Shown here: positions 1 through 23,219 of the stretch, one piece after another | Layout: the number at the start of each line of letters is the position of its first letter | Position numbering within the stretch: position 1 is the stretch's first letter | Source: Sulfolobus ellipsoid virus 1 and six more viruses of crenarchaea | Length of the DNA: 23,219 bases | Reading direction: 5' to 3' (one strand) | Virus record (IMG/VR): IMGVR_UViG_2974561068_000001 | Coordinates: 1 to 23,219 of that record | The notes under the pieces: model-generated | Databases searched by the model: none | What the model saw: only the letters and a program-made list of their open reading frames with translations | Told to the model about the DNA's origin: nothing | Translations under genes and position numbers: made by a program

Positions 1-173
1 GCTGCCTATTTGCTTTCTCCCGTTATCCCAAGGTCTTTAGGGCAATTTTCGTAAAAATCTGTAATACCCTACTTCAAAATTCAATTTCCCACCGTTACCT
101 ATATAAGGAACCTCCAAAAAACTGAATTTCTCTCTCACCTGCCAAACAAACCTACACCCCTCTCCCACCTCCC
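1..173 (+). repeat. Left inverted terminal repeat (173 bp)
   Basis: Position i pairs with 23220-i at every position I checked up to 173; first mismatch at 174 (T) vs 23046 (C). Confidence 0.97.
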
Positions 174-341
174 TCCTTTAAATTTAAGGGTTTATGGGTG
201 AGGTATCCTAGACGTAAAACTGTTAGCCTTTCTTTTTATCTAAATTTACGTTAAGCGTATCTGTTAAAACCCTAAATTAACGTAAAATTTATCTTACTTA
301 GTGAAACGTCATCTCAAGGATTATTATTTGCGATAGAAACG

Positions 342-386
342 TTTATTTATTTAACCAGCTTATTCTTTTTTGGGTAACAAAAAATG
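342..386 (+). promoter_or_regulatory. TATA box plus short leader (TTTTTTGGGTAACAAAAAATG) for the first left-arm gene
   Basis: TTTATTTA at 342-349, about 35-42 nt upstream of ATG 384; the leader resembles those at 22908-22927 and 19568-19586. Confidence 0.6.
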
Positions 387-716
387 TTAGACGTGAACCT
401 ATTAAGGGAAATAAATCAACACATAAAGTATCCAATTTTTAAGCCAATCGATATTAATGTAGATTCTAAAGAGAAAAAGATTAAGCTAACCGTTAGACTA
501 GACAGATATACCTTAACAGAAGGCGAGGAAAAGGAAATAAGGGACTTTTTACGCGTTAACAATAGGTTATATTTAGAGGACGGTAAGCATATAGAGGTTA
601 TCGTAGGAGGGTATACTGATATAGATAATAACGAAATAATCGTAACTATGGACTTCTGGTTTATAGAGAGCGTTTTACAGGTTTTCGAAAATATTTATAT
701 TAAGTTAGGTGCTTAA
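384..716 (+). CDS. Hypothetical protein, 110 aa; member of the left-arm paralog family
   Basis: ORF with promoter and leader; shares GKxxE(V/I)xxxxYxxxDxN with the 718 ORF and EV..(D/E)N..FIE spacing with the 3223 ORF. Confidence 0.85.
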   Translation: MLDVNLLREINQHIKYPIFKPIDINVDSKEKKIKLTVRLDRYTLTEGEEKEIRDFLRVNNRLYLEDGKHIEVIVGGYTDIDNNEIIVTMDFWFIESVLQVFENIYIKLGA

Positions 717-717
717 C

Positions 718-1026
718 ATGATTAACTTAAGCGAGATTAAATTACCGATAAAGGTAAACGATATAAAAGTTGAAAACCTAAAGGGCTCTGTTCACATTTT
801 CATAAAACTATTCGATAGGGAGATGGATCCTAAGTCTTATCTAAAGTTGATAAGGGGATTAGAGAAAGATGGACACCCAGTTAGACATGTGGGAAAATGT
901 TACGAAATAACGCACTGGTTCTATCAAAATCCAGATATGAATAAGTATATGACAGCTTTACGCTTATGTTACGAAACTAATAAATTATGCGTATATGAAT
1001 CTGTTCATGTGGTTATACATGTCTGA
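718..1026 (+). CDS. Hypothetical protein, 102 aa; left-arm paralog family
   Basis: The track GTG at 709 lies within the SD AGGTG (707-711), so ATG 718 is the likely start. Similar to ORF 384. Confidence 0.85.
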   Translation: MINLSEIKLPIKVNDIKVENLKGSVHIFIKLFDREMDPKSYLKLIRGLEKDGHPVRHVGKCYEITHWFYQNPDMNKYMTALRLCYETNKLCVYESVHVVIHV

Positions 1027-1474
1027 TCCAATAATAGAAGGTTTTAGAAGAAAAGGATGTAATTATTGGGAAGAGCAGGATATAGCGTATGGTCTAATGG
1101 ACTTTAAGGGTAAGACCTTACTTAATATAGGGGCAGACTGTGGTACGACTGTTTATTATGCGTATTTAAAGGGTATTAAGCACGTTATAGCTTACGAAAA
1201 GGATCCTAACCTTAGGAAATACCTTTACTCTTTTCCATTTGTAGATGTTAGGGGAGAGTGGGTAAACCAATATGATAATGCAGACTTACTAATAATGGAC
1301 TGTGAGGGTTGTGAGGTATTTTTAGATTTATCCCAGCTTAATAAGTATTCTCAGTACTGTATAGCTATTCACTCATGGATCCCAAATTTTAGGGACTTTT
1401 TACTCAAATTTAGAGGAAACAGATTAACTTATGTAACTCCAGACCTAAAGGAATTCGTGTTATGTAAGGTGTGA
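1019..1474 (+). CDS. SAM-dependent methyltransferase, FkbM-like (about 151 aa)
   Basis: Motif I LLNIGADCG, then IAYEKD and LIMDCEGCE (FkbM-type xDxEGxE). Start ATG 1019 (overlapping the upstream stop) preferred to track start 995. Confidence 0.8.
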   Translation: MSDPIIEGFRRKGCNYWEEQDIAYGLMDFKGKTLLNIGADCGTTVYYAYLKGIKHVIAYEKDPNLRKYLYSFPFVDVRGEWVNQYDNADLLIMDCEGCEVFLDLSQLNKYSQYCIAIHSWIPNFRDFLLKFRGNRLTYVTPDLKEFVLCKV

Positions 1475-1478
1475 GATT

Positions 1479-1814
1479 ATGGAAATAGGGGATTTGGAAA
1501 GCGAAATAATAGACCTAATAGCTTTTCCACCTTACTCATTTAAGAACTGGGAGATTCCAGAGTTAGACGGTAGTTTTAAGATAAGGATCCTATTGAAAGG
1601 GTATAAGTGCTATGAAAGCTTATTCATTAGATTAATAGAGAAATTACAAAAGGAAATAGGTTTAGATCCATATTTTAATGAGAAAGGCGAAAGGGGTGGT
1701 AGAAAGTTAATAGGTAAAGTTAACTCTAAGGTTAAGATCTATCTTGATATAGCGTATAACCTTAATGAGGAAAAAATAAAGATATATCTTTCTTTAGAGG
1801 GGAGTAGTAGATAA
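1479..1814 (+). CDS. Hypothetical protein, 111 aa; possible distant member of the left-arm paralog family
   Basis: SD AGGTG upstream; GSFKIRI resembles GSFKIDI in the 2835 ORF. Confidence 0.8.
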   Translation: MEIGDLESEIIDLIAFPPYSFKNWEIPELDGSFKIRILLKGYKCYESLFIRLIEKLQKEIGLDPYFNEKGERGGRKLIGKVNSKVKIYLDIAYNLNEEKIKIYLSLEGSSR

Positions 1815-1846
1815 AAGGTCCTACGTAATTTTTTCGTAGTTTTACG

Positions 1847-2116
1847 TTAGTCCAATATTTTTAGTGTCTTTACGTAAAGTTTGTTGTTTTCGTAGTATAA
1901 GATTAAGGCGTATCTTTCTTCTACATTTTTACCATCTTTATCGTATATCCTTATTATGTAACCTATTTTGGTAAAGTCTGAAGGATACCACTTTTTATAG
2001 TCTACATCTCTCTTTAGTATTTGGCTTAGCCTTTTACACAAGTTGTAAATTGAGATCTGAAAACCATTTATCTCATCTAACATTAGTTCTTTTATTAACT
2101 CTTTTGTGTCAGACAC
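1847..2116 (-). CDS. Hypothetical protein, 89 aa; similar to the divergent 69-aa ORF
   Basis: GTG start; YIIRIYDKDGKNVEERYALIL resembles YIRLVTYDGKEVVRVFFDKYALVL. Confidence 0.75.
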   Translation of the reverse strand: MSDTKELIKELMLDEINGFQISIYNLCKRLSQILKRDVDYKKWYPSDFTKIGYIIRIYDKDGKNVEERYALILYYENNKLYVKTLKILD

Positions 2117-2183
2117 TTTTATCGTATCTATTCTTTTTTGAGGACTTAAAAAGTTTTTATATAAGTTAACAGTATCTTATTTT

Positions 2184-2393
2184 ATGGATCTAAAAAATCT
2201 GTATACGGAAATCCTAGATGCTATGAACGCTAAGTTATCGTTATTTTTTATAGAGGACTATTCTACTGTTATAGCGTTAAACCCTACTTATATAAGGTTA
2301 GTGACATATGACGGTAAAGAGGTAGTGAGGGTATTTTTTGATAAATATGCTTTAGTCCTAAAAGAAAGTGGGTATGAAATAATGGTCTTTTAA
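2184..2393 (+). CDS. Hypothetical protein, 69 aa
   Basis: Leaderless: TTTATATAA about 28 nt upstream with an A-rich BRE. Similar to 1847..2116. Confidence 0.8.
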   Translation: MDLKNLYTEILDAMNAKLSLFFIEDYSTVIALNPTYIRLVTYDGKEVVRVFFDKYALVLKESGYEIMVF

Positions 2394-2452
2394 AGAGAAC
2401 TGTTTTTTATTTTTCCGTAAGTCTTTTTAACCCATCAGTTTGTTTTATATTT

Positions 2453-2758
2453 ATGCCTAAGTATGTCCCTCCAGAAGTAAAGGAAAAGGTAAAAGAGAGA
2501 ACTATCCAGCTTTTTAAAATGGGTTATTCCTATAGGGAGATCCATGATATTATAAAAGAGGAATTTGGATCTGGAGTATCTGAAGCTATGTTATTTTTAG
2601 AGTCTTTACCAGAAGAGGTAAAGTTACAGCATATAGATGCATATGTTGAGAGGATGTATAAGGCTTACTTAATGCTTTATGGTGAAAAAAAGGCTAAAGA
2701 AAAGGCAGAAAAGTTAAGGAAAAGCCTTTTAGTCAGAAGGGAGAACTTTAAGAAATGA
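2453..2758 (+). CDS. Helix-turn-helix DNA-binding protein, 101 aa
   Basis: N-terminal EVKEKVKERTIQLFKMGYSYREIHDIIKEEFGSGVSE fits an HTH pattern (L..G.S..EI...I..EFG..VS). Confidence 0.7.
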   Translation: MPKYVPPEVKEKVKERTIQLFKMGYSYREIHDIIKEEFGSGVSEAMLFLESLPEEVKLQHIDAYVERMYKAYLMLYGEKKAKEKAEKLRKSLLVRRENFKK

Positions 2759-2834
2759 ATTATTCTTTTTTGATGTGTATCAACACAGTAAGCTTTTTAT
2801 ATTGGTTTTATGTTATTTAAATCGGGTTAACCCT

Positions 2835-3230
2835 ATGTCTAACCTATCTAAAGGTCTAAAATTTAAGGAAAAACAAGCTTCTTTTTTATACGACCTAATT
2901 TTAAGGGAGATCAAGACTGAAGATAAGTTAGCCTCTAGTATAACTAATCTAGTTGTTAATTCTGGTTCTTTTAAGATAGATATTGAGATTGGCGAGTTTA
3001 AGGTAAATGAAAAGGCTATAGAAGAGTTAGATAATGCCTTACTAGATTTAGAACCAGAGCATACTAATTATGATGAGACTGTTGATAAGATCATGACTTA
3101 CGATTTCTTAATGGATGAGGTAGTTGTTAGGGGATATAAAATAAGGCAGATTTTAAGCGTAAAATTAAACTATACTAGATCAACTGTTTATTTAACTACT
3201 ACTTTAGTAGGTGTTAAAAACTATGATTAA
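2835..3230 (+). CDS. Hypothetical protein, about 131 aa; left-arm paralog family
   Basis: ATG 2835 preferred to track 2775 (TATA near 2795-2802, GGGTTA leader). KIDIEIGEFKVNEKAIEEL resembles KLMIKIGEFDATEEDLKRL of the next ORF. Confidence 0.75.
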   Translation: MSNLSKGLKFKEKQASFLYDLILREIKTEDKLASSITNLVVNSGSFKIDIEIGEFKVNEKAIEELDNALLDLEPEHTNYDETVDKIMTYDFLMDEVVVRGYKIRQILSVKLNYTRSTVYLTTTLVGVKNYD

Positions 3231-3489
3231 CGAAAAAATCTTAGAAGAGTCTTTACCTAAGGTTTTAAAAGATAAAGATACTATCAAGCTAATGATTAAG
3301 ATAGGCGAGTTTGATGCCACTGAAGAAGATTTAAAGAGATTAGCAGAGATAGCGAGTGACTTATGGGATTCTATTTATATACCTAAATATGATGTAGAGG
3401 TTTTATTTTACCCATTAATTAAAAAGGAGAACGGGAAAGCAGTTTTATATCAAGTTCTAAAGTTTATTGAACCTTCTTTAGAAGGGTAA
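3223..3489 (+). CDS. Hypothetical protein, 88 aa; left-arm paralog family
   Basis: The track GTG 3211 is part of SD AGGTG (3209-3213), so ATG 3223 is preferred. Similar to ORFs 2835 and 384. Confidence 0.85.
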   Translation: MINEKILEESLPKVLKDKDTIKLMIKIGEFDATEEDLKRLAEIASDLWDSIYIPKYDVEVLFYPLIKKENGKAVLYQVLKFIEPSLEG

Positions 3490-3495
3490 GTCATC

Positions 3496-3502
3496 TTTTT
3501 TT
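3496..3502 (+). terminator. Oligo-T archaeal terminator candidate
   Basis: T7 run just after stop 3489. Confidence 0.45.
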
Positions 3503-3553
3503 ATATGCCAAAAATTTTTATACCCTTTTTCTTAGATATATACTTAGATAGCC

Positions 3554-3865
3554 ATGGTAGAGCTATCTAAGTTTAAATCTACGTGGATTTCAAGTAAAAA
3601 CGTAAGAGATTTTTTAGGTAAAAAGTTAGTAGTCCAGAATTTCGATATAGTTGATGGGATGTACGGGAGTAATATCGTATTATACGTAAAGGTAGTAGAT
3701 GGCGATAACGAATACCCTACGATGAAAGTAAGGTTAAACAGAGTCTCTATAGAGAACTTAGAGAGGAAGGGAGTAACTCAAGCAGAAGAGTTAATCGGTA
3801 AAGCAATAAAGTTAAGTACTGTAAAAACTAGGATGGGAGAAAGCGTTTTAGTAGACTTAGCCTAA
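3554..3865 (+). CDS. Putative OB-fold single-stranded DNA-binding protein, 103 aa
   Basis: Beta-rich pattern ending in V.LNR.S...L...G......L.GK.I.L, like phage OB-fold SSB-like families (LNKTN...G...W.G..I.L). Pattern recognition only. Confidence 0.55.
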   Translation: MVELSKFKSTWISSKNVRDFLGKKLVVQNFDIVDGMYGSNIVLYVKVVDGDNEYPTMKVRLNRVSIENLERKGVTQAEELIGKAIKLSTVKTRMGESVLVDLA

Positions 3866-3916
3866 TCTTTTTACTCTCACAAAAAGTTAAATACCCTTTT
3901 TTTCTACTCTTTATTT

Positions 3917-4105
3917 ATGTATAAAGTACTTTACCGAGACCCATATTTTTCGTTATACGAAATAGATGGTCATACAGTTCAAGTAATCAAGAAAGATAAC
4001 GCTATAATAAGAACGACATGTGACTGTTTCGCCTTTATTTTTGATAAAGAGTGTAAACACAGAAAAATAGCCATTATATTGGAAAAGAACCTAAATAAGG
4101 ATTAA
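3917..4105 (+). CDS. SWIM zinc-finger protein, 62 aa
   Basis: CDC-x8-CKH (CxCxnCxH) preceded by beta strands; leaderless, TTAAATA at 3887-3893. Confidence 0.85.
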   Translation: MYKVLYRDPYFSLYEIDGHTVQVIKKDNAIIRTTCDCFAFIFDKECKHRKIAIILEKNLNKD

Positions 4106-4278
4106 TCATCTACCTCTTTAACTTCTGTTTTGGGTAATTCAATTAAGCCTTTTTTGGAATATGCTAATATTAAGTTGATATCTGTTAAGTACTTTTTCTT
4201 CAGTTCTAATATATCGTTTATGTAATCGTAGATTAGTTTATACATATATTCAGTATAACTTATGGTCTCATCACTCAT
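4102..4278 (-). CDS. Small protein, 58 aa, absent from the track (MSDETISYTEYMYKLIYDYINDILELKKKYLTDINLILAYSKKGLIELPKTEVKEVDD)
   Basis: Hand translation; ATGA overlap with the stop of 4275..4736; SD GGGTGA upstream; fills the intergenic gap exactly. Confidence 0.8.
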   Translation of the reverse strand: MSDETISYTEYMYKLIYDYINDILELKKKYLTDINLILAYSKKGLIELPKTEVKEVDD

Positions 4279-5207: not shown

Positions 5208-5531
5208 ATGGCTAGGAAAAAATCAGTTCTAAAAAGGATGTCTAGGAGTCCAGCAGACGTAGCCAGTAATGCGTGGGATAAATACCTATCTAAGATTAAC
5301 CAAATGATAGCTAATTATACTAGTGTTATGCAGAACATGCCCAGTAATGCAGACGCAGAGGCTAGATATGAGAAAGGTGTAGCCACATGGACCGCTATAA
5401 TGAGGAATCCAGAGGTTAGGAATGGTATTGCAGGAGTTGTTAGGAATGCTAAATATACTTATGAGAAAACTCTAATGGGAGTAAGCTCTACTGGTACTGT
5501 TCCTATAACTATTCCAGCACAGACTGGATAA
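5208..5531 (+). CDS. Basic alpha-helical protein, 107 aa; probable major nucleocapsid (DNA-wrapping) protein
   Basis: MARKKSVLKRMSR basic N-terminus, amphipathic helices, no TM, own strong TATA (TTTTATATA near 5174-5182), located in the structural block. The function is an inference. Confidence 0.7.
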   Translation: MARKKSVLKRMSRSPADVASNAWDKYLSKINQMIANYTSVMQNMPSNADAEARYEKGVATWTAIMRNPEVRNGIAGVVRNAKYTYEKTLMGVSSTGTVPITIPAQTG

Positions 5532-5546
5532 AAAAGGTGAAAAATT

Positions 5547-5825
5547 TTGAGTTATCAAACTTTACAAAGGTTTAATTTTTCTAACCTTACTAGTGATCTA
5601 TCAGAAGCTATAGGTGCCACGATAGGTATAGTAGCAGGAGGTTACTTATCATTAAAAGTATTCGCTAACTCTACTTATATGGGTCCAATAGTAACTTTAG
5701 CTATTGGTTTTGTTATCTTATTAGTGTTTCCAGATCTAGGGTTCTTAAATGGTATCGGTGCGGGCATGTTAGGTTACGGATTATATAAAATAATTCAAGT
5801 AGCATCTAACGGAGCAATCGTATAA
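5547..5825 (+). CDS. Three-TM Gly-rich membrane protein, 92 aa; paralog of 7191..7427
   Basis: TTG start with SD AAGGTGA; GxxxG-rich helices; aligns with ORF 7191. Confidence 0.85.
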   Translation: MSYQTLQRFNFSNLTSDLSEAIGATIGIVAGGYLSLKVFANSTYMGPIVTLAIGFVILLVFPDLGFLNGIGAGMLGYGLYKIIQVASNGAIV

Positions 5826-7190: not shown

Positions 7191-7427
7191 ATGTATACTC
7201 AGACAGTATCAGAAGTTATCGGTACTTTTACGGGCATATTTTTAGGAGGGTACTTTACGGTATCTGTATTAAGTGGTGCTATTGCTTCTAGTATTGTTGA
7301 AATAATAATAGCCATTATCTTACTTTACCTATTTCCAAATCAAGGCTTTATGAACGGATTAGGAATTGGAATATTAGCGATAGGGGTTTTAAATCTGGTA
7401 GCTAAACAAACTGGGGTACAATTATGA
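7191..7427 (+). CDS. Three-TM Gly-rich membrane protein, 78 aa; paralog of 5547..5825
   Basis: Shared pattern SE.IG...GI..GGY / FP..GF.NG.G.G.L. Confidence 0.85.
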   Translation: MYTQTVSEVIGTFTGIFLGGYFTVSVLSGAIASSIVEIIIAIILLYLFPNQGFMNGLGIGILAIGVLNLVAKQTGVQL

Positions 7428-13106: not shown

Positions 13107-13357
13107 GCATTATCTCAGATGCCTCTTCTGTAGCCACAATAGTTTTTTACATATTTTTCTTTTTATCTATAACTTTCAAACCAGTTAAGAAATGGTTACT
13201 CCGCGTTCTAATTTTAGATACTCTTAGAGATTTCTTAGCAGACGGAGACCAAACAATAAAAGAAATAAGATCACTTTACTATTTACTTAAGATAGCCTTA
13301 GAACATAAAGACGTAATGAAAAAAGAAGAATTTCACGTTATAGAAAAAGATGACTAA
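13103..13357 (+). CDS. N-terminal TM plus helical protein, 84 aa; probable virus-associated pyramid (egress) protein
   Basis: TM VATIVFYIFFFLSITF followed by amphipathic helices and a charged tail, the architecture of PVAP/SIFV gp43-type proteins. I recall an 84-aa SEV1 ORF described as the six-sided pyramid protein (unverified recall). Confidence 0.7.
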   Translation: MSIISDASSVATIVFYIFFFLSITFKPVKKWLLRVLILDTLRDFLADGDQTIKEIRSLYYLLKIALEHKDVMKKEEFHVIEKDD

Positions 13358-13611
13358 TCATTTTTCTTAGCCATCTTTATCGCGTTATCTATTTTATCTT
13401 TATTCTCATTAAGTACCTCTTTAATACCCCCTTCGATATCATTAAGCAATGATAACCTCGATAGAACAAATTGGTAACACTCATCATTTTCACATGTAAT
13501 CCTTAATTCTATCACCTTACTTTTCTTATGTCCTATAACATCTATCTTATTTATGCCTCTCTGTTTTAGTTCACTTAAAATATAATTTGCTATGACAGAT
13601 GGATCTATCAT
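13354..13611 (-). CDS. Hypothetical protein, 85 aa
   Basis: Leaderless from the shared TTATAA at 13636-13641; its stop overlaps that of 13103..13357. Confidence 0.8.
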   Translation of the reverse strand: MIDPSVIANYILSELKQRGINKIDVIGHKKSKVIELRITCENDECYQFVLSRLSLLNDIEGGIKEVLNENKDKIDNAIKMAKKND

Positions 13612-18716: not shown

Positions 18717-19031
18717 TTAAACTACAGACTCTTCCGAAAGTAATTTACCTTCTTTCTTTATCTTTTCGTATCTCCTAATCATGGATTTAACGTAAGCCCT
18801 ACATGTCTTAGGTACCCTTCTAAAATCCCTTATCTGTCCATTTCTAAACATAATAGCATACTTAACAGCTATCCTATTCTTAATATGTGCGTTCATATGA
18901 ACACTTAAATTAGAAAAATAAAAACCACATAAAGGGCATTCATAAAAAACTATACCTTTATATAAATAACGCTTAGCGTGAATGTAAAAATGATTAGAGT
19001 TAACCTCTGTTTTGCATATCGGACATATCAT
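18717..19031 (-). CDS. Tandem C2H2-type zinc-finger protein, 104 aa
   Basis: CPIC...H..H and CPLC-x9-HMNAH, followed by a basic helical C-terminus. Confidence 0.85.
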   Translation of the reverse strand: MICPICKTEVNSNHFYIHAKRYLYKGIVFYECPLCGFYFSNLSVHMNAHIKNRIAVKYAIMFRNGQIRDFRRVPKTCRAYVKSMIRRYEKIKKEGKLLSEESVV

Positions 19032-19362
19032 TCTTAATTTCTCTCCACCTTCTTAATATTAACCGAGCACTTTTATATATTCTCTCCCTATTATCAGCAC
19101 CACTAAAAGCTCTTAAAAACATGTATACGTCATCGTAACTAGCTCCTTGAGCCATTAGTTCTAAAACCAGAATGTTATAACCTTTTAACGTCCCTCCTAA
19201 GTGTGCCATCAAATGAGCAGACAGTTCGTATTTATTTCCAGCCAAATAAGGACACAGAGGACACTCTAAATAACCCTTATGCTTAACAGCATGAGTCATT
19301 ATATGACCCGGTTTATTGTAAATACCTTTACAAATAGGACATAATGGCACTTTATTCACCAT
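19000..19362 (-). CDS. Tandem C2H2 zinc-finger protein, 120 aa
   Basis: Two canonical fingers: CPIC-x12-HAVKH and CPLC-x12-HLMAH. Confidence 0.9.
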   Translation of the reverse strand: MVNKVPLCPICKGIYNKPGHIMTHAVKHKGYLECPLCPYLAGNKYELSAHLMAHLGGTLKGYNILVLELMAQGASYDDVYMFLRAFSGADNRERIYKSARLILRRWREIKNDMSDMQNRG

Positions 19363-19675: not shown

Positions 19676-20032
19676 ATGAGTGATAACCTAAGTCAGGATG
19701 ATTTACGCGTTCTCGGAAAAATAATCAAGTTAGAAAGACCTTATGAGTGTGGTCCTATAGAGTATAAAAGGTACTACTTTTACCCATGTTTAGAGGATAC
19801 TGGATCCTATATCATAACAGCGACTGACCCATCTCAAGTAATAGAAGATGAGGACATTATGGAATTGGTAAAATATAACTACTCATTAGAACTAGTAGTA
19901 GTTGAACCTTACGATGAACAGCAGGTAAAATTACTTAAAAGAAACAAAAGGAGATACGCCACAATAGTTAACGGTAGACTTATCGAGAACAGACTAAAGT
20001 ACTTAGGTGTCAAAATTGGCAAACCCTCTTAA
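19676..20032 (+). CDS. Hypothetical protein, 118 aa; first gene of the replication operon
   Basis: TTTAAAAA at 19634-19641, SD AGGTG; acidic and Tyr-rich. Confidence 0.85.
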   Translation: MSDNLSQDDLRVLGKIIKLERPYECGPIEYKRYYFYPCLEDTGSYIITATDPSQVIEDEDIMELVKYNYSLELVVVEPYDEQQVKLLKRNKRRYATIVNGRLIENRLKYLGVKIGKPS

Positions 20033-20588
20033 CAGAGTTAAGTCTTTTTTTTCCCGTGTAGCTAAAACAATAAGCGAAAGCCCGATAGGTAAAGCCTTTA
20101 GAGCAATAGGAGAAAAGATAGGAATAATTAAACCAAAACCACCACCTCCCCCTCCTAAACCTCCCACAATTACACCATTAAAGACTCCAGCAAAACCACC
20201 CACAGTTACACCATTAAAAACACCTACACCTCCTAAACCTCCCACAGTTACCCCTCCTAAACCTCCTACACCTCCTAAACCAGTTACCCCTCCTAAAGTT
20301 ACTCCCACAATTACCCCAGTAAGAGCAGTACCTTTTAGACCTAGAAAAGTGACTTACCAATTGATAATCGCCACATGCGTTAGAATAATACAAACCAGAT
20401 ATGGTAAAGTTAAGTTAATAATACTTTATTCTGAAGTTGTAAGACCTACTGAGAACTTATACGATAAGATAAGCCAATTAAGAGGGATAAACTGTCATGA
20501 CTTTAAAGTTTACACTTTTGATCATTTACCCACTAGAGACGATATAGAGAGAGCTTTAGCAAATTACCTATACCACACTCCCCTATAG
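20016..20588 (+). CDS. Proline-rich protein with N-terminal amphipathic helices (about 190 aa), directly upstream of pPolB
   Basis: The track GTG 20007 lies within SD AGGTG (20005-20009), so TTG 20016 is the likely start. Central PPKPPT(V/I)TP repeats; stop abuts the pol start. Confidence 0.85.
   Translation: MANPLNRVKSFFSRVAKTISESPIGKAFRAIGEKIGIIKPKPPPPPPKPPTITPLKTPAKPPTVTPLKTPTPPKPPTVTPPKPPTPPKPVTPPKVTPTITPVRAVPFRPRKVTYQLIIATCVRIIQTRYGKVKLIILYSEVVRPTENLYDKISQLRGINCHDFKVYTFDHLPTRDDIERALANYLYHTPL
20130..20321 (+). repeat. Degenerate coding tandem repeats, PPKPPT(I/V)TP(LKT)
   Basis: Repeated nucleotide units such as CCTAAACCTCCCACA(A/G)TTAC and TTACACCATTAAA. Confidence 0.85.
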
Positions 20589-22588
20589 TGATGCCTATGG
20601 ATTACGCCTATAAACAGTTCACATATGACTCTGAGGCGTGGCGTATACCAAATAGGGCTATGAAAAAAGAAATACAGAAATTCGCTATAGCGTGTTTATA
20701 TGACGGAAAAAGTTCAATGATACTTAACAGTCCAGAAGAAGTAGCTAATACGTTTATCAAAATACTAAACTACTATAAAAGAGCCATTATATGGGCTCAT
20801 AACTGGCGTTACGATATAAGTTTAATAGATGAGGTATTCTTAAGAAAAGCATATGAAAACGGATTAATGGCTTCTATCCCTAGGCAGGATCCATTTTATA
20901 TATTCCTAAAGAAAGGTGACCATATCTTACTATTTAACGATACTACTAACTTCTTTAAAGGCGTATCACTCAAAAAACTAGCAGAACTATTTAATACGAA
21001 ACACAGAAAGACCTTTACAGAAAGAGACTATAAGATGAGTGCTAAGAAATGGAATGAGATGATAGCATTCCATAAAAATAAAGTAATAGAGGGAGTTAAG
21101 GCAGACGCTATAACCCTTTATGAGGTAGTGCGTGAAATGCAAAAATACTTTAAACAAATACATAAGGACCTTCATACTAAGTTCATTTATTCAAACATAA
21201 GCATACCACAAATAGCCTTTAGATTAGCTAAAAGAGCTATCTACGAAAAACTGACAGAAAAATACGGAAAGAAAAAAGGAGTAGATAAACTAAGGTGGAT
21301 GTTCTCCCACCACTTTAAAGAGGAAAGAATTAAAATAAACGAAACAGTACTAGAGTCATATTACGGTGGGAGAGTAGAAGCGTTTATCCTTAATTATAAG
21401 CCAGAGTACTTAAGAGTGTTAGATGTTAATTCCTTATACCCCTACGTTATGCGTTCATTTCCTTACCCCACTGTGCCTAGCCAAAACAAAACAGAAACGT
21501 TTATAGCAGATGTAAAATATGAGTGCAAAAAGTGGTCCAGAGTATTACCAGTTATAACTAAATACGAATTCGATGACGGAGAGATAATAACAGAAGTGTA
21601 TACAGATAAGCGTAAAATGACCAGTGTAGAAGTTAAGATGATAGAGGAAAGCCCAGACTGTAAAATCATAAGTATAGAAAATCCGATATATTTCGAAAGT
21701 GAAATACTGTTCAACAACTTTATCGATTACCTATATAGGATAAAACAAGAGGCTACTGAAAAGATGCTTAAGGTACCTAAAGATAGCGATGAGTACTATA
21801 AGTACAAAATACTCAGAGAGACAGCTAAGTTAATCATGAACTCCAGCTACGGTAAATTCGGACAGCATAAACAAAGGTCCAAAATATACCTAGTAGATGA
21901 GTACTTAAGTAAACTTGATACTACTGGAAAGCTAATCATAAGGGCATTAATAGACCAAAAGATTAAAGATGTAGATGAAAACGCGATTTTTGAGTATAAC
22001 GGAAAGAAACATACAGTGTTAGGAAAGAGCCTTATAAGTATAGTAGAAGACGCTAAACCAGAGTACCATGTACCTATCGCGAGTTTCGTTACAGCTTACG
22101 CTCGCCTAGTCTTATACCAATTAATAGAAAAAGCAGGGAAAGAGAACGTATTTTACGGGGATACCGATTCGATATTTACGAATGATAACGGATATTATAA
22201 CTTAAGAAATGAACTAAGCGATACTGAATTAGGTAAGCTAAAGTTAGAAGAGGATAAGAGTGGTTACTTAAAGATATTCGGTAAAAAGTATTACCTAAAA
22301 TTCGATGAATACGGAAACGTAATAGACTATACGATTAAGGGTATATACCAATTCGATATAGAAAAGGCTATAAGAGAGGGTAATAAGCTAATCCTAAAAG
22401 ATGATAAAGGAGAGATCCACATTAATATAGAAACTGGAGAGGCTATAGGATATCAAATTAAAAGACATGTGGGAGAAAACCAGTTCATATTTGAGGACCA
22501 CCCAATAAACTTAACCCCAAAAAAGAGGTTATATTACGTAAAAGAGGGTCACTTAGAGATAGGTTACCCATTAGAAAAAGTCATTTAA
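20588..22588 (+). CDS. polB: Protein-primed family B DNA polymerase, 666 aa
   Basis: ExoI YDSE, ExoII HNWRYD, YYGGR, motif A LDVNSLYP, motif B KLIMNSSYGKF, TAYAR, motif C YGDTDS, KKY; TPR1- and TPR2-like insertions. The start could also be ATG 20591 or 20597. Confidence 0.97.
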   Translation: MMPMDYAYKQFTYDSEAWRIPNRAMKKEIQKFAIACLYDGKSSMILNSPEEVANTFIKILNYYKRAIIWAHNWRYDISLIDEVFLRKAYENGLMASIPRQDPFYIFLKKGDHILLFNDTTNFFKGVSLKKLAELFNTKHRKTFTERDYKMSAKKWNEMIAFHKNKVIEGVKADAITLYEVVREMQKYFKQIHKDLHTKFIYSNISIPQIAFRLAKRAIYEKLTEKYGKKKGVDKLRWMFSHHFKEERIKINETVLESYYGGRVEAFILNYKPEYLRVLDVNSLYPYVMRSFPYPTVPSQNKTETFIADVKYECKKWSRVLPVITKYEFDDGEIITEVYTDKRKMTSVEVKMIEESPDCKIISIENPIYFESEILFNNFIDYLYRIKQEATEKMLKVPKDSDEYYKYKILRETAKLIMNSSYGKFGQHKQRSKIYLVDEYLSKLDTTGKLIIRALIDQKIKDVDENAIFEYNGKKHTVLGKSLISIVEDAKPEYHVPIASFVTAYARLVLYQLIEKAGKENVFYGDTDSIFTNDNGYYNLRNELSDTELGKLKLEEDKSGYLKIFGKKYYLKFDEYGNVIDYTIKGIYQFDIEKAIREGNKLILKDDKGEIHINIETGEAIGYQIKRHVGENQFIFEDHPINLTPKKRLYYVKEGHLEIGYPLEKVI

Positions 22589-22910
22589 ACTTAGCCTCTT
22601 CTGTAATTAACCTAACTTCTAGAACTCGCCTTTTCATCACGTATTCCAGTTCTAAATAAACGTTAATCATTAAAAAAGGGTTAAGCATAAAGAAACCTAT
22701 GTTTTTCCTTACCCCAAAACCCTTAGGTAAGTTTTCTCCCTTAAAGGTGTCCCTAAACCATTCCATTATCTCTAAAGCGTCTGAAAAGTCTATACCCCAT
22801 GATGTTAAATTAAAAAACTTAAAAAAGCAGGGTAACTTTTCTCCCCAATCCTGTAATATTGCGTTTAATATGTATTCCTTTATCTCACGTTCTAAATCTG
22901 GGTCTAACAT
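22581..22910 (-). CDS. Hypothetical protein, 109 aa (minus strand; the track label is wrong)
   Basis: CAT at 22908-22910 and TCA at 22581-22583; TATA at 22944-22951 and GGGGTTA leader; converges on pol with an 8-bp overlap. Confidence 0.85.
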   Translation of the reverse strand: MLDPDLEREIKEYILNAILQDWGEKLPCFFKFFNLTSWGIDFSDALEIMEWFRDTFKGENLPKGFGVRKNIGFFMLNPFLMINVYLELEYVMKRRVLEVRLITEEAKFK

Positions 22911-22951
22911 TTTGTAACCCCAAAAAATAATTATCCCTAAAAGATATAAAG
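22908..22951 (-). promoter_or_regulatory. TATA box plus leader TTTTTTGGGGTTACAAAATG for the first right-arm gene
   Basis: Minus-strand TTTATATC at 22951-22944; the leader matches 19568-19586 at 18 of 19 positions. Confidence 0.65.
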
Positions 22952-23046: not shown

Positions 23047-23219
23047 GGGAGGTGGGAGAGGGGTGTAGGTTTGTTTGGCAGGTGAGAGAGAAATTCAGTT
23101 TTTTGGAGGTTCCTTATATAGGTAACGGTGGGAAATTGAATTTTGAAGTAGGGTATTACAGATTTTTACGAAAATTGCCCTAAAGACCTTGGGATAACGG
23201 GAGAAAGCAAATAGGCAGC
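23047..23219 (-). repeat. Right inverted terminal repeat (173 bp)
   Basis: Reverse complement of 1-173, ending ...GCAAATAGGCAGC. Confidence 0.97.

What the first reader, a model, noticed from the sequence alone, without database searches (positions are those of the whole stretch)
384..3489. Hidden paralog family of 4-5 small proteins in the left terminal arm (candidate anti-defence arsenal)
Seen by manual alignment. 384 vs 718: GKHIEVIVGGYTDIDNNE / GKCYEITHWFYQNPDMNK, plus PIFKPIDINV / PIKVNDIKV. 384 vs 3223: IEVIVGGYTDIDNNEIIVTMDFWFIESVL / VEVLFYPLIKKENGKAVLYQVLKFIEPSL (ungapped). 2835 vs 3223: KIDIEIGEFKVNEKAIEEL / KLMIKIGEFDATEEDLKRL. 1479 vs 2835: GSFKIRI / GSFKIDI. Known: terminal early regions of Sulfolobales viruses carry anti-CRISPR genes, sometimes as paralog expansions (AcrID1-like in rudiviruses). 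Inference: one small alpha/beta fold expanded and diversified against host defence.
Basis: partly seen in the sequence, partly recalled or inferred. Interest (0 to 1): 0.72.

Follow-up and report, generated by a model that had tools for sequence, protein, structure and literature searches.

The report
Diverged small-protein family, archaeal virus arm
Five small neighbouring genes at the left end of the Sulfolobus ellipsoid virus 1 genome appear to be very diverged copies of one small protein whose closest known look-alike is an archaeal anti-CRISPR protein, making them testable candidates for how this virus blocks host immunity.

Summary
The window is the complete 23,219-bp genome of Sulfolobus ellipsoid virus 1 (SEV1). 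The five ORFs and the quoted peptides are real. Only A–B (384/718) and D–E (2835/3223) beat chance pairwise, and only marginally. The quoted A–E and A–B segments do not.

The family as a whole is nevertheless supported:
- An unbiased block search over all 30 small SEV1 proteins picks exactly these five, in one register.
- Independent AlphaFold models of A and E have collinear secondary structure.
- A Foldseek search with the E model against BFVD puts SEV1 proteins of 111, 131 and 102 aa (C, D, B by length) in the top 10. No other SEV1 protein is in the top 50.

None of the five has a homologue, even in 28 related metagenomic viruses, so the arm left of ~4100 is SEV1-specific.

The closest known relative is the AcrID1 anti-CRISPR family:
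- It is the top PDB fold hit (6EXP, but TM ~0.3).
- E shows 31% identity over 58 aa to SIRV2 ORF73.
- hhalign scores above all controls, at 7% probability.
- The curated AcrID1 HMM does not match.

Anti-defence function is plausible but untested. Verdict: a probable new, highly diverged AcrID1-like paralogue family.

The parts
384..716 (+). Member A (110 aa, pI 5.0), first gene inward of the left ITR. Shared N-terminal block at residues 25-54 (nt 456-545).
   Evidence: ORF. It is 100% identical to the BFVD entry A0A2H4RBM2 of SEV1. A-B SW score 53, z~5. AF2 single-sequence model has pLDDT 60 and topology H-E-E-H-E-E-E-E-H. Its elements are collinear with E at offset 12. It is not retrieved structurally by E, and its own fold search found no other SEV1 protein.
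718..1026 (+). Member B (102 aa, pI 8.8), starting 1 nt after A's stop. Block at residues 17-46 (nt 766-855).
   Evidence: ORF. Foldseek from E: the SEV1 102-aa protein ranks 10 in BFVD, prob 0.99, TMq 0.48 (identified with B by its unique length). A-B alignment.
995..1474 (+). SAM-dependent methyltransferase (159 aa) embedded between B and C. Not a family member. Part of the apparent A-B-MTase-C unit.
   Evidence: phrog_5108, E 1e-62. 45-49% identity to rudivirus methyltransferases.
1479..1814 (+). Member C (111 aa, pI 6.4), starting 4 nt after the methyltransferase stop. Block at residues 25-54 (nt 1551-1640). It has an inserted Gly/Arg-rich loop.
   Evidence: ORF. Foldseek from E: the SEV1 111-aa protein ranks 4, prob 0.91, TMq 0.42. 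hhalign of AB vs C and DE vs C align in the block register.
2835..3230 (+). Member D (131 aa, pI 5.0), with about 13-25 extra N-terminal residues. Block at residues 38-67 (nt 2946-3035).
   Evidence: ORF. D-E SW score 54, hhalign rank 3 of 435. Foldseek from E: the SEV1 131-aa protein ranks 7, prob 0.66. A TATA-like TTATTTAAAT about 20 nt upstream favours the ATG at 2835 over the GTG at 2775 (inference).
3223..3489 (+). Member E (88 aa, pI 4.7), the minimal member, overlapping D's end by 8 nt. Block at residues 13-42 (nt 3259-3348).
   Evidence: AF2 model has pLDDT 78.5, pTM 0.60 and topology H4-16 E22-30 H34-46 E49-53 E58-69 E72-82. Top PDB fold hits are 6exp_B and 6exp_A, AcrID1. BLASTP against SIRV2 ORF73, an AcrID1_fam member: 31% identity over 58 aa, pairwise E 5e-4.
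1..173 (.). Left inverted terminal repeat. It defines the 'terminal arm' context.
   Evidence: 173-nt perfect inverted repeat with 23047-23219. Identity stops at 173.
174..4101 (.). SEV1-specific variable left arm. It holds A-E plus eight other small genes. The conserved core of the virus lineage begins at the ORF 4102-4278 (-).
   Evidence: tblastn and phmmer of all SEV1 small proteins against 28 related metagenomic loci found homologues only for ORFs from 4102 rightwards. The one exception is the methyltransferase, found in a single locus.

Best explanation
A-E are five very diverged paralogues of one small soluble alpha/beta domain. The core order is helix, strand, helix, then a three-stranded antiparallel sheet, in proteins of 88-131 aa.

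They lie in two tightly packed gene strings (A-B-methyltransferase-C, and D-E) in the lineage-specific left arm of the SEV1 genome. They most likely arose by old tandem duplications followed by fast divergence, since no DNA-level similarity is left.

The fold is most like that of the AcrID1 family of rudiviruses and lipothrixviruses, and the family is probably a remote branch of it.

Inferred mechanism, by analogy and not shown: each copy acts as a stoichiometric protein-binding inhibitor of a host defence component. AcrID1 works this way, its dimers sequestering Cas10d. Different copies would have different targets. Because the host is reported to carry CRISPR I-A and III-B, the targets are probably not Cas10d.

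My probabilities are:
- at least four of the five share ancestry: ~0.8;
- remote homology to AcrID1: ~0.55;
- at least one copy is an anti-defence protein: ~0.45.
For: **Shown.**
- An unbiased best 5-block search over 13 or 30 SEV1 proteins returns exactly A-E in one register near the N-terminus. P is 0.005-0.01 against real-protein sets of 13.
- Independent hhalign sub-profile comparisons (AB/C, DE/C, ABC/DE) all align in that same register.
- AF2 single-sequence models of A and E match element by element at the offset given by their sequence alignment.
- Foldseek from E puts SEV1 proteins of 111, 131 and 102 aa (C, D, B) at ranks 4, 7 and 10 of BFVD. No other SEV1 protein is in the top 50.
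- The genes are clustered, co-oriented, and abutting or overlapping.
- None has a homologue in 28 related viral contigs, which conserve everything from 4102 rightwards. None was found in a 5.8-billion-protein database (A only) or in GTDB genomes (C and D).

**AcrID1 link.**
- 6exp_B and 6exp_A are ranks 1-2 of 350,542 PDB chains.
- AcrID1-family proteins sit at BFVD ranks 3, 6, 8, 12, 17 (and 19, an unchecked SIRV3 protein). For the SIRV1 entries at 8 and 17 the assignment rests on species and length.
- E's best hits in 784 ORFs are the AcrID1_fam members SIRV2 ORF73 and SIRV1 ORF75 (phmmer E 0.008-0.009; BLASTP pairwise E 5e-4).
- hhalign of A5 against A7 scores 20.85. That is above 150/150 column permutations and 29/29 real control families.

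**Context.**
- The closest relatives carry a STIV_B116/DUF1874 homologue in the equivalent arm. From my own knowledge this is the AcrIII-1 ring-nuclease family.
- AcrID1 homologues are multi-copy and terminal in rudiviruses (PMC11065993).
Against: - No conventional threshold is met. hhalign probabilities are at most 17% within the family and 7% to AcrID1.
- Foldseek E values are 0.04-0.1, with TM only 0.3-0.48 and rmsd 8-14 A.
- HMM leave-one-out tests on full-length MAFFT alignments fail for A and C.
- The block score is reached by ~18-20% of random sets of 30 real proteins.
- The C-terminal half gives only P~0.04-0.06.
- A's own model (pLDDT 60) retrieved no other SEV1 protein.
- The NCBIfam AcrID1_fam and Pfam models do not match A-E.
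- The hhalign signal to AcrID1 disappears with the AB, DE or CDE sub-alignments.
- B's best AcrID1 alignment is not collinear.
- There is no expression, binding or interference data. The host is reported without a type I-D system.

Confidence: 0.6

Rival explanations
1. There is no common ancestry. The five are unrelated small K/E/I-rich alpha/beta proteins of a hyperthermophile virus, and their strand-turn-helix segments look alike by convergence and composition.
For: - Eight of the ten pairwise comparisons are at background.
- Two quoted segments are at chance.
- Random sets of 30 real proteins reach the block score in ~18-20% of trials.
- HMM leave-one-out fails for A and C.
- The conserved core ORF 13354-13611 and other proteins show a similar hairpin-helix pattern.
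Against: - Foldseek from E finds C, D and B in the top 10 of BFVD, while the ~32 other SEV1 proteins of the same composition are absent from the top 50.
- The best block consists only of co-oriented neighbours in the leftmost nine genes.
- The register is consistent across independent hhalign runs.
- The A and E models are collinear.
Confidence: 0.12
2. There are two independent tandem duplicates only (A/B and D/E). C and the cross-links between the pairs are chance.
For: - A-B and D-E are the only pairs above real-protein nulls.
- hhalign of AB against DE scores 14.4, within the control range.
- A was not retrieved by E, and A retrieved nothing.
Against: - E retrieves B (prob 0.99) and C (prob 0.91) at least as well as its own neighbour D (prob 0.66).
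- hhalign of ABC against DE scores 19.4, above all controls for both profiles and in the shared register.
- The A and E models are collinear.
Confidence: 0.15
3. The family is real but is not anti-defence. The copies would be other accessory proteins, such as early regulators, host-takeover factors, or helpers of protein-primed replication at the genome ends.
For: - No functional data exist.
- The host is reported to lack type I-D.
- The nearest AcrID1 paralogues in rudiviruses are mostly uncharacterised themselves.
- The arm also carries a methyltransferase and other unrelated small genes.
Against: - There is no DNA-binding motif or family hit.
- Three of the five are acidic, with pI about 5.
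- Absence from all relatives argues against a core replication or assembly role.
- The best structural and sequence resemblance is to a proven anti-CRISPR family.
- The equivalent arm of relatives holds a DUF1874/AcrIII-1-type gene.
Confidence: 0.3

Closest known systems
AcrID1 anti-CRISPR family (NCBIfam NF033952, Pfam PF07118; SIRV3 gp02 PDB 6EXP/6THH; SIFV0014 2H36; AFV1 ORF99 3DJW/3DF6)
   Same: - Small proteins: 73-119 aa in AcrID1, 88-131 aa here.
- The same apparent order of secondary-structure elements. For AcrID1 this is inferred from alignment A7, not from the solved structure.
- Many diverged copies per genome, located in the terminal arms of linear Sulfolobales virus genomes (PMC11065993).
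- Top PDB fold hit for E.
- E is 31% identical over 58 aa to SIRV2 ORF73.
- hhalign score is above all controls.
   Different: - The curated family HMMs do not match A-E.
- TM to 6EXP is only ~0.3.
- The virus family (Ovaliviridae) is unrelated to Rudiviridae and Lipothrixviridae.
- The host is reported with I-A and III-B, not I-D, so the known target Cas10d (PMC7689449) is probably absent.
- Dimerisation and activity are unknown.
Tandem small-gene paralogues in the left arm of SEV1's metagenomic relatives (L017:1640-1924 and L017:1917-2192; also in L020 and L023)
   Same: The same arm of the same virus lineage, with adjacent co-oriented ~90-aa genes. They are present or absent between close relatives, being replaced by a phosphatase gene in L016.
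   Different: They are clearly similar to each other on direct reading of the two sequences. They show no detectable similarity to A-E.
AcrIII-1 / DUF1874 (STIV B116-like, PF08960) viral ring nucleases
   Same: A known anti-CRISPR type that occupies the equivalent left arm in the closest relatives (L017:500-895, E 2e-23).
   Different: It is an enzyme family with no similarity to A-E. SEV1 itself has no copy among the ORFs scanned.

Membership tests
AcrID1 family (NCBIfam NF033952 / Pfam PF07118) | Match to the curated family HMM above its cut-off | tested here: not met
   NCBIfam scan at E<=10 gives no hit for A-E. SIRV1 gp03, ORF75 and SIRV2 ORF73 score 93, 57 and 45 bits against a cut-off of 30. 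Pfam gives no PF07118 hit at E<=1 or E<=10.
AcrID1 family (NCBIfam NF033952 / Pfam PF07118) | Significant sequence or profile similarity to bona fide members | tested here: inconclusive
   - E against SIRV2 ORF73: BLASTP pairwise E 5e-4; phmmer E 0.008 in a 784-ORF database.
- hhalign A5 against A7: prob 7.2%, E 0.005, score 20.85. Controls have mean 9.9 and max 14.5.
- The signal is lost with the AB, DE and CDE sub-alignments.
- A 14-member HMM gives E 0.7-2.4.
AcrID1 family (NCBIfam NF033952 / Pfam PF07118) | Same fold as the solved AcrID1 structure (6EXP) | tested here: inconclusive
   6exp_B and 6exp_A are ranks 1-2 of 350,542 chains for the E model. However, E is 0.05-0.1, prob 0.75/0.69, TM 0.31 and rmsd 9-12 A.
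AcrID1 family (NCBIfam NF033952 / Pfam PF07118) | Multi-copy, diverged, in the terminal variable arms of a linear Sulfolobales virus genome | tested here: met
   Five copies lie within 384-3489 next to the ITR. The arm is absent from relatives. For comparison, I found at least 10 AcrID1-family copies near the SIRV2 termini.
AcrID1 family (NCBIfam NF033952 / Pfam PF07118) | Binds Cas10d and blocks type I-D interference | not testable with these tools
   This needs biochemistry or genetics. The host Sulfolobus sp. A20 is reported with I-A and III-B only (PMC5127849).
Archaeal-virus anti-defence genes as defined by a shared early regulatory sequence (PMC11065993) | A virus-specific conserved promoter or regulatory motif upstream of the gene or operon, and immediate-early expression | tested here: inconclusive
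   TTATTCTTTTTTG occurs three times, only upstream of A, F and D (expected 0.24). Its distance to the TATA-like boxes differs between sites. No transcript data were available.
Intragenomic paralogue family (common descent of A-E) | Sequence similarity beyond chance | tested here: inconclusive
   - A-B and D-E are above shuffled and real-protein nulls, uncorrected.
- The other eight pairs are at background.
- The 5-block has P 0.005-0.01 for sets of 13, and ~0.18-0.20 for sets of 30.
- C-terminal block: P 0.04-0.06.
Intragenomic paralogue family (common descent of A-E) | Shared predicted fold or topology | tested here: met
   Met for B, C, D and E by Foldseek (ranks 10, 4, 7 from E). Met for A against E by collinear AF2 secondary-structure elements. 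A was not retrieved by fold search.
Intragenomic paralogue family (common descent of A-E) | Clustered and co-oriented, as expected from tandem duplication | tested here: met
   All five are on the + strand within 3.1 kb. A/B abut and D/E overlap. No DNA-level repeat remains.

The most novel reading that the evidence does not exclude
The SEV1 genes are a remote branch of the AcrID1 fold that has been re-targeted. The host lacks type I-D, so the targets would be type I-A or III-B CRISPR or non-CRISPR defences. If so, the AcrID1 scaffold would be a general, horizontally shared inhibitor platform used by unrelated archaeal virus families (Rudiviridae, Lipothrixviridae, Ovaliviridae). It would also provide the first anti-defence genes for the Ovaliviridae.
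Probability: 0.3. Interest if true: 0.75.

Novelty: new member of a known kind. Interest (0 to 1): 0.58.

Why it matters
SEV1 is the only cultured member of the Ovaliviridae, and most of its 38 genes have no assigned function. No anti-defence gene is described for it in the papers I could read.

Grouping five orphan genes into one family, and linking that family (tentatively) to a structurally and mechanistically characterised anti-CRISPR, does two things. It turns a block of 'hypothetical proteins' into a short list for standard interference assays. It also suggests that the AcrID1 fold is more widespread and more divergent than sequence models can detect.

There is a methodological point too. 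Pairwise and HMM tests nearly miss this family, whereas the multi-sequence block search plus a predicted-structure search recovers it.

Tried and rejected
1. Megablast of the whole window, and tblastn of the capsid protein, against the phage collection gave no match. SEV1 is not in that collection. Identity was established instead from length, ITR, the ICTV text and 100% BFVD and IMG/VR matches.
2. Pfam, PHROGs and NCBIfam scans of all left-arm proteins found only the methyltransferase.
3. The homologue search for A found none. The word-index search also missed known VP4 homologues, so its negative result is weak.
4. IMG/VR scans with VP4 homologues found nothing. The metagenome scan gave 28 loci.
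5. HMMs from full-length MAFFT alignments, and leave-one-out tests on them, were at the noise level. This is partly because MAFFT shifts D/E by one strand.
6. Extended-ITR origin of the A versus 22581-22910 N-terminal similarity was rejected. DNA identity stops at 173.
7. No DNA-level repeats were found between the paralogues.
8. A small and a 14-member AcrID1 HMM against SEV1 proteins gave nothing above shuffles.
9. A profile of A5 against PDB sequences gave no meaningful hit.
10. GTDB genome scans with D and C found none.
11. B's top AcrID1 hit was rejected as non-collinear.


Full report
**Identity of the window.** The window is a complete linear genome of 23,219 bp.
- It has perfect 173-nt inverted terminal repeats.
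- It encodes a protein-primed family-B DNA polymerase at 20588-22588.
- It has a rudivirus-type SAM methyltransferase at 995-1474 and a glycosyltransferase.
- This matches the ICTV description of Sulfolobus ellipsoid virus 1 (SEV1, Ovaliviridae): 23,219 bp, 172-bp ITRs, 38 ORFs (PMC8515868).
- The IMG/VR contig found with the methyltransferase has the same length as the window and encodes an identical methyltransferase.
- My models of ORFs A and E hit BFVD entries of SEV1 at 100% identity.

**The observation.** The five ORFs exist as described, all on the + strand:

| ORF | Coordinates | Length |
|---|---|---|
| A | 384-716 | 110 aa |
| B | 718-1026 | 102 aa |
| C | 1479-1814 | 111 aa |
| D | 2835-3230 | 131 aa |
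| E | 3223-3489 | 88 aa |

- A and B abut. The methyltransferase overlaps B's end, and C starts 4 nt after it. D and E overlap by 8 nt. So there are two gene strings.
- All quoted peptides are present.
- Taken one by one against shuffles, the quoted A/B 18-mer (P 0.59) and the ungapped A/E 29-mer (P 0.32) are at chance. The D/E 19-mer (P 0.006) and the C/D heptamer (P 0.028) are not.

**Pairwise tests.**
- Smith-Waterman scores against shuffles single out A-B: score 53, z about 5, P about 1e-3, with 25% identity over 94 collinear residues.
- They also single out D-E: score 54, z about 4.
- Against 151 real small proteins of Sulfolobales viruses, A-B beats every comparison for both partners. 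D-E is beaten once for D and twice for E.
- The other eight pairs are at background.
- With 435 pairs in the genome, these P values do not survive correction.
- Positive controls show what undoubted paralogues look like here: the membrane proteins 5547/7191 (z 14) and the zinc-finger proteins 18717/19000 (z 12).
- phmmer, and HMMs built from full-length MAFFT alignments, stay at the level of shuffled decoys. This is partly because MAFFT puts D/E one strand out of register.

**Family-level sequence test.** I searched for the best ungapped block shared by any five proteins.
- Among the 13 left-arm proteins, and among all 30 small SEV1 proteins, the optimum is exactly A, B, C, D, E.
- The block sits at A25/B17/C25/D38/E13 for width 30, and in the same register for width 40.
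- It covers a strand with a G-S-[FV]-[KH]-I-x-I-like start (three of the five share this), followed by a turn and an amphipathic helix.
- It is 6-9 sd above shuffles.
- Shuffles are too lenient, so I built a null from annotated small proteins of SIRV1, AFV1, ABV, STIV, the metagenomic relatives and the rest of SEV1.
- The observed score is reached by 0.5-1% of random sets of 13 unrelated proteins, but by 18-20% of sets of 30.
- Five known AcrID1 paralogues score higher, at 245/270 against 190/145.
- Leave-one-out ranks every member first of 119. That test inherits the selection bias, so I give it little weight.
- An independent point is that the best five are all co-oriented genes among the leftmost nine. 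For a random choice this has probability about 1e-3 to 5e-3 (my calculation).
- The C-terminal halves, which were not used for selection, share a hairpin block only weakly (P 0.04-0.06).
- hhalign between sub-profiles (AB/C, DE/C, ABC/DE) gives low probabilities. Every alignment nevertheless falls in the same register, and ABC/DE (19.4) exceeds all 29 control families for both profiles.

**Structure.** I ran two independent single-sequence AlphaFold predictions.
- A has pLDDT 60 and elements H4-13 E19-27 E32-39 H46-58 E61-63 E69-71 E75-79 E84-90 H94-109.
- E has pLDDT 78.5 and pTM 0.60, with elements H4-16 E22-30 H34-46 E49-53 E58-69 E72-82.
- Adding 12 to the E coordinates is the offset of their Smith-Waterman alignment. 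With that offset, strand, helix and the three following strands coincide. The helix is 46-58 in both.
- Foldseek with the E model against BFVD returns itself first.
- It then returns SEV1 proteins of 111 aa (rank 4, prob 0.91, TMq 0.42), 131 aa (rank 7, prob 0.66) and 102 aa (rank 10, prob 0.99, TMq 0.48).
- Those lengths are unique to C, D and B in the ORF list. The identification by length is an inference.
- No other SEV1 protein is in the top 50, although they share the same composition.
- Each hit alone is weak (E 0.04-0.07). Three of the four predicted relatives in the top ten of such a library is not a chance outcome.
- A is the weak point. E does not retrieve it, and A's own low-confidence model retrieved no SEV1 protein.

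**Relatives and context.**
- A has no homologue in 5.8 billion proteins.
- The capsid protein VP4 (5208-5531) has 22 homologues by full HMMER search.
- Through those homologues I fetched 28 related metagenomic loci.
- These loci conserve the genes from 4102 rightwards at 30-75% identity. They have nothing matching A-E or the other genes of 384-4105, apart from one methyltransferase.
- C and D have no relative in GTDB genomes.
- So the left arm is lineage-specific and turns over fast.
- In the closest relatives the equivalent arm holds a STIV_B116/DUF1874 homologue (E 2e-23). From my own knowledge this is the AcrIII-1 ring-nuclease family.
- That arm also holds its own pair of tandem small paralogues. 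In one relative this pair is replaced by a dual-specificity phosphatase.

**Link to AcrID1.** Several weak lines agree.
- The two best PDB fold hits of E, out of 350,542 chains, are chains of 6EXP, the SIRV3 AcrID1 structure (E 0.05-0.1, TM about 0.3). AFV1 ORF99 is at rank 44.
- In BFVD, AcrID1-family proteins occupy ranks 3, 6, 8, 12 and 17, and possibly 19 (family membership checked; for the SIRV1 entries by species and length, while the SIRV3 entry at 19 was not checked).
- Among 784 ORFs of Sulfolobales viruses, E's best hits are SIRV2 ORF73 and SIRV1 ORF75 (phmmer E 0.008-0.009). Both pass the curated AcrID1_fam cut-off.
- The E/ORF73 alignment is collinear over 58 residues at 31% identity, with pairwise BLASTP E 5e-4.
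- hhalign of the block-anchored SEV1 alignment against 14 AcrID1-family proteins gives probability 7%, E 0.005 and score 20.85. This is above all 150 column permutations and all 29 control families.

Other results argue against the link.
- The curated HMMs do not match.
- The hhalign signal vanishes with other sub-alignments.
- B's best AcrID1 alignment is out of register.
- The superposition is poor.

I put remote homology at roughly 0.55.

**Mechanism.**
- *Shown:* a cluster of small, soluble proteins, three of them acidic with pI about 5, lineage-specific and sharing one predicted fold.
- *Inferred:* duplication and divergence under selection from the host, with action by stoichiometric binding to host defence proteins. 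AcrID1 dimers do this with Cas10d (PMC7689449).
- The reported host has I-A and III-B systems (PMC5127849), and SEV1 lacks the DUF1874 gene of its relatives. An anti-III-B or anti-I-A role is therefore the natural guess.
- 'Early' expression is not shown. TATA-like boxes precede A and D.
- A 13-nt motif occurs only upstream of A, F and D, but at inconsistent spacing.

**Novelty and verdict.**
- The papers I could read on SEV1 do not mention paralogues or anti-CRISPRs. The regulatory-motif survey of archaeal anti-defence genes does not cover SEV1.
- I rate this a probable new, very diverged member of a known kind: terminal multi-copy AcrID1-like families.
- It is of moderate interest and directly testable.

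Noticed in passing
5547-5825 (+) and 7191-7427 (+): Clear paralogous pair of small hydrophobic (membrane) proteins (SW z 14, hhalign 97.6%). The first copy is 71-75% identical to its homologues in the closest relatives.
   Followed up: partly
18717-19031 (-) and 19000-19362 (-): Overlapping pair of paralogous Cys/His-rich (zinc-finger-like) basic proteins (SW z 12, hhalign 95%). One has a BLAST link to SIRV1 gp20.
   Followed up: no
2835-3230 (residues 72-125) vs 19676-20032 (residues 50-103): The C-terminal half of D gives the third-best pairwise score in the genome with an ORF near the polymerase end (SW 59, z 6.1, phmmer E 0.013). hhalign gives only 1.8%. Unexplained.
   Followed up: partly
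360-425 (+) and 22868-22935 (-): The first inward-reading gene at each genome end shares its first 14 residues (MLDxxLxREIxxxI) and about 25 nt upstream (TTTTTTGGG..ACAAAA..ATGTTAGAC). The ITR identity nevertheless ends at 173 nt. This may be a shared start or regulatory region.
   Followed up: partly
360-372, 2128-2140, 2760-2772 (+): The 13-nt motif TTATTCTTTTTTG occurs three times (expected 0.24; 0 of 100 shuffles reach three). All copies are in the left arm, upstream of A, F and D. Spacing to the TATA-like boxes is inconsistent, so it could be an operator or an oligo-T terminator.
   Followed up: partly
3497-3530 and 3868-3901 (+): The promoters of the ORFs at 3554 and 3917 share a 34-nt stretch that includes AAAAANTTNNATACCCTTTTT (BRE/TATA-like).
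   Followed up: no
20007-20588 (+): Basic (pI 10.4), proline-rich 193-aa ORF ending exactly where the DNA polymerase gene starts. This is the position expected for the terminal protein, which the ICTV profile says has not been identified.
   Followed up: no
L017:500-895, L017:1640-2192, L016:2002-2550: The left arms of the closest metagenomic relatives carry a STIV_B116/DUF1874 homologue and a tandem pair of ~92-aa paralogues. In one relative the pair is replaced by a dual-specificity phosphatase gene.
   Followed up: partly
13354-13611 (-): This conserved core ORF (56-59% identical in the closest relatives) has a helix/hairpin/helix N-terminus resembling the family block. Its homologues are the top SEV1-lineage non-family hits of the block profile, at z 2-3.4.
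   Followed up: no
3917-4105 (+) and 3554-3865 (+): The 62-aa ORF has a CxC...CxH pattern reminiscent of a SWIM-type zinc finger (my reading). The 103-aa ORF has a weak PHROG hit to single-strand DNA-binding proteins (E 0.034).
   Followed up: no
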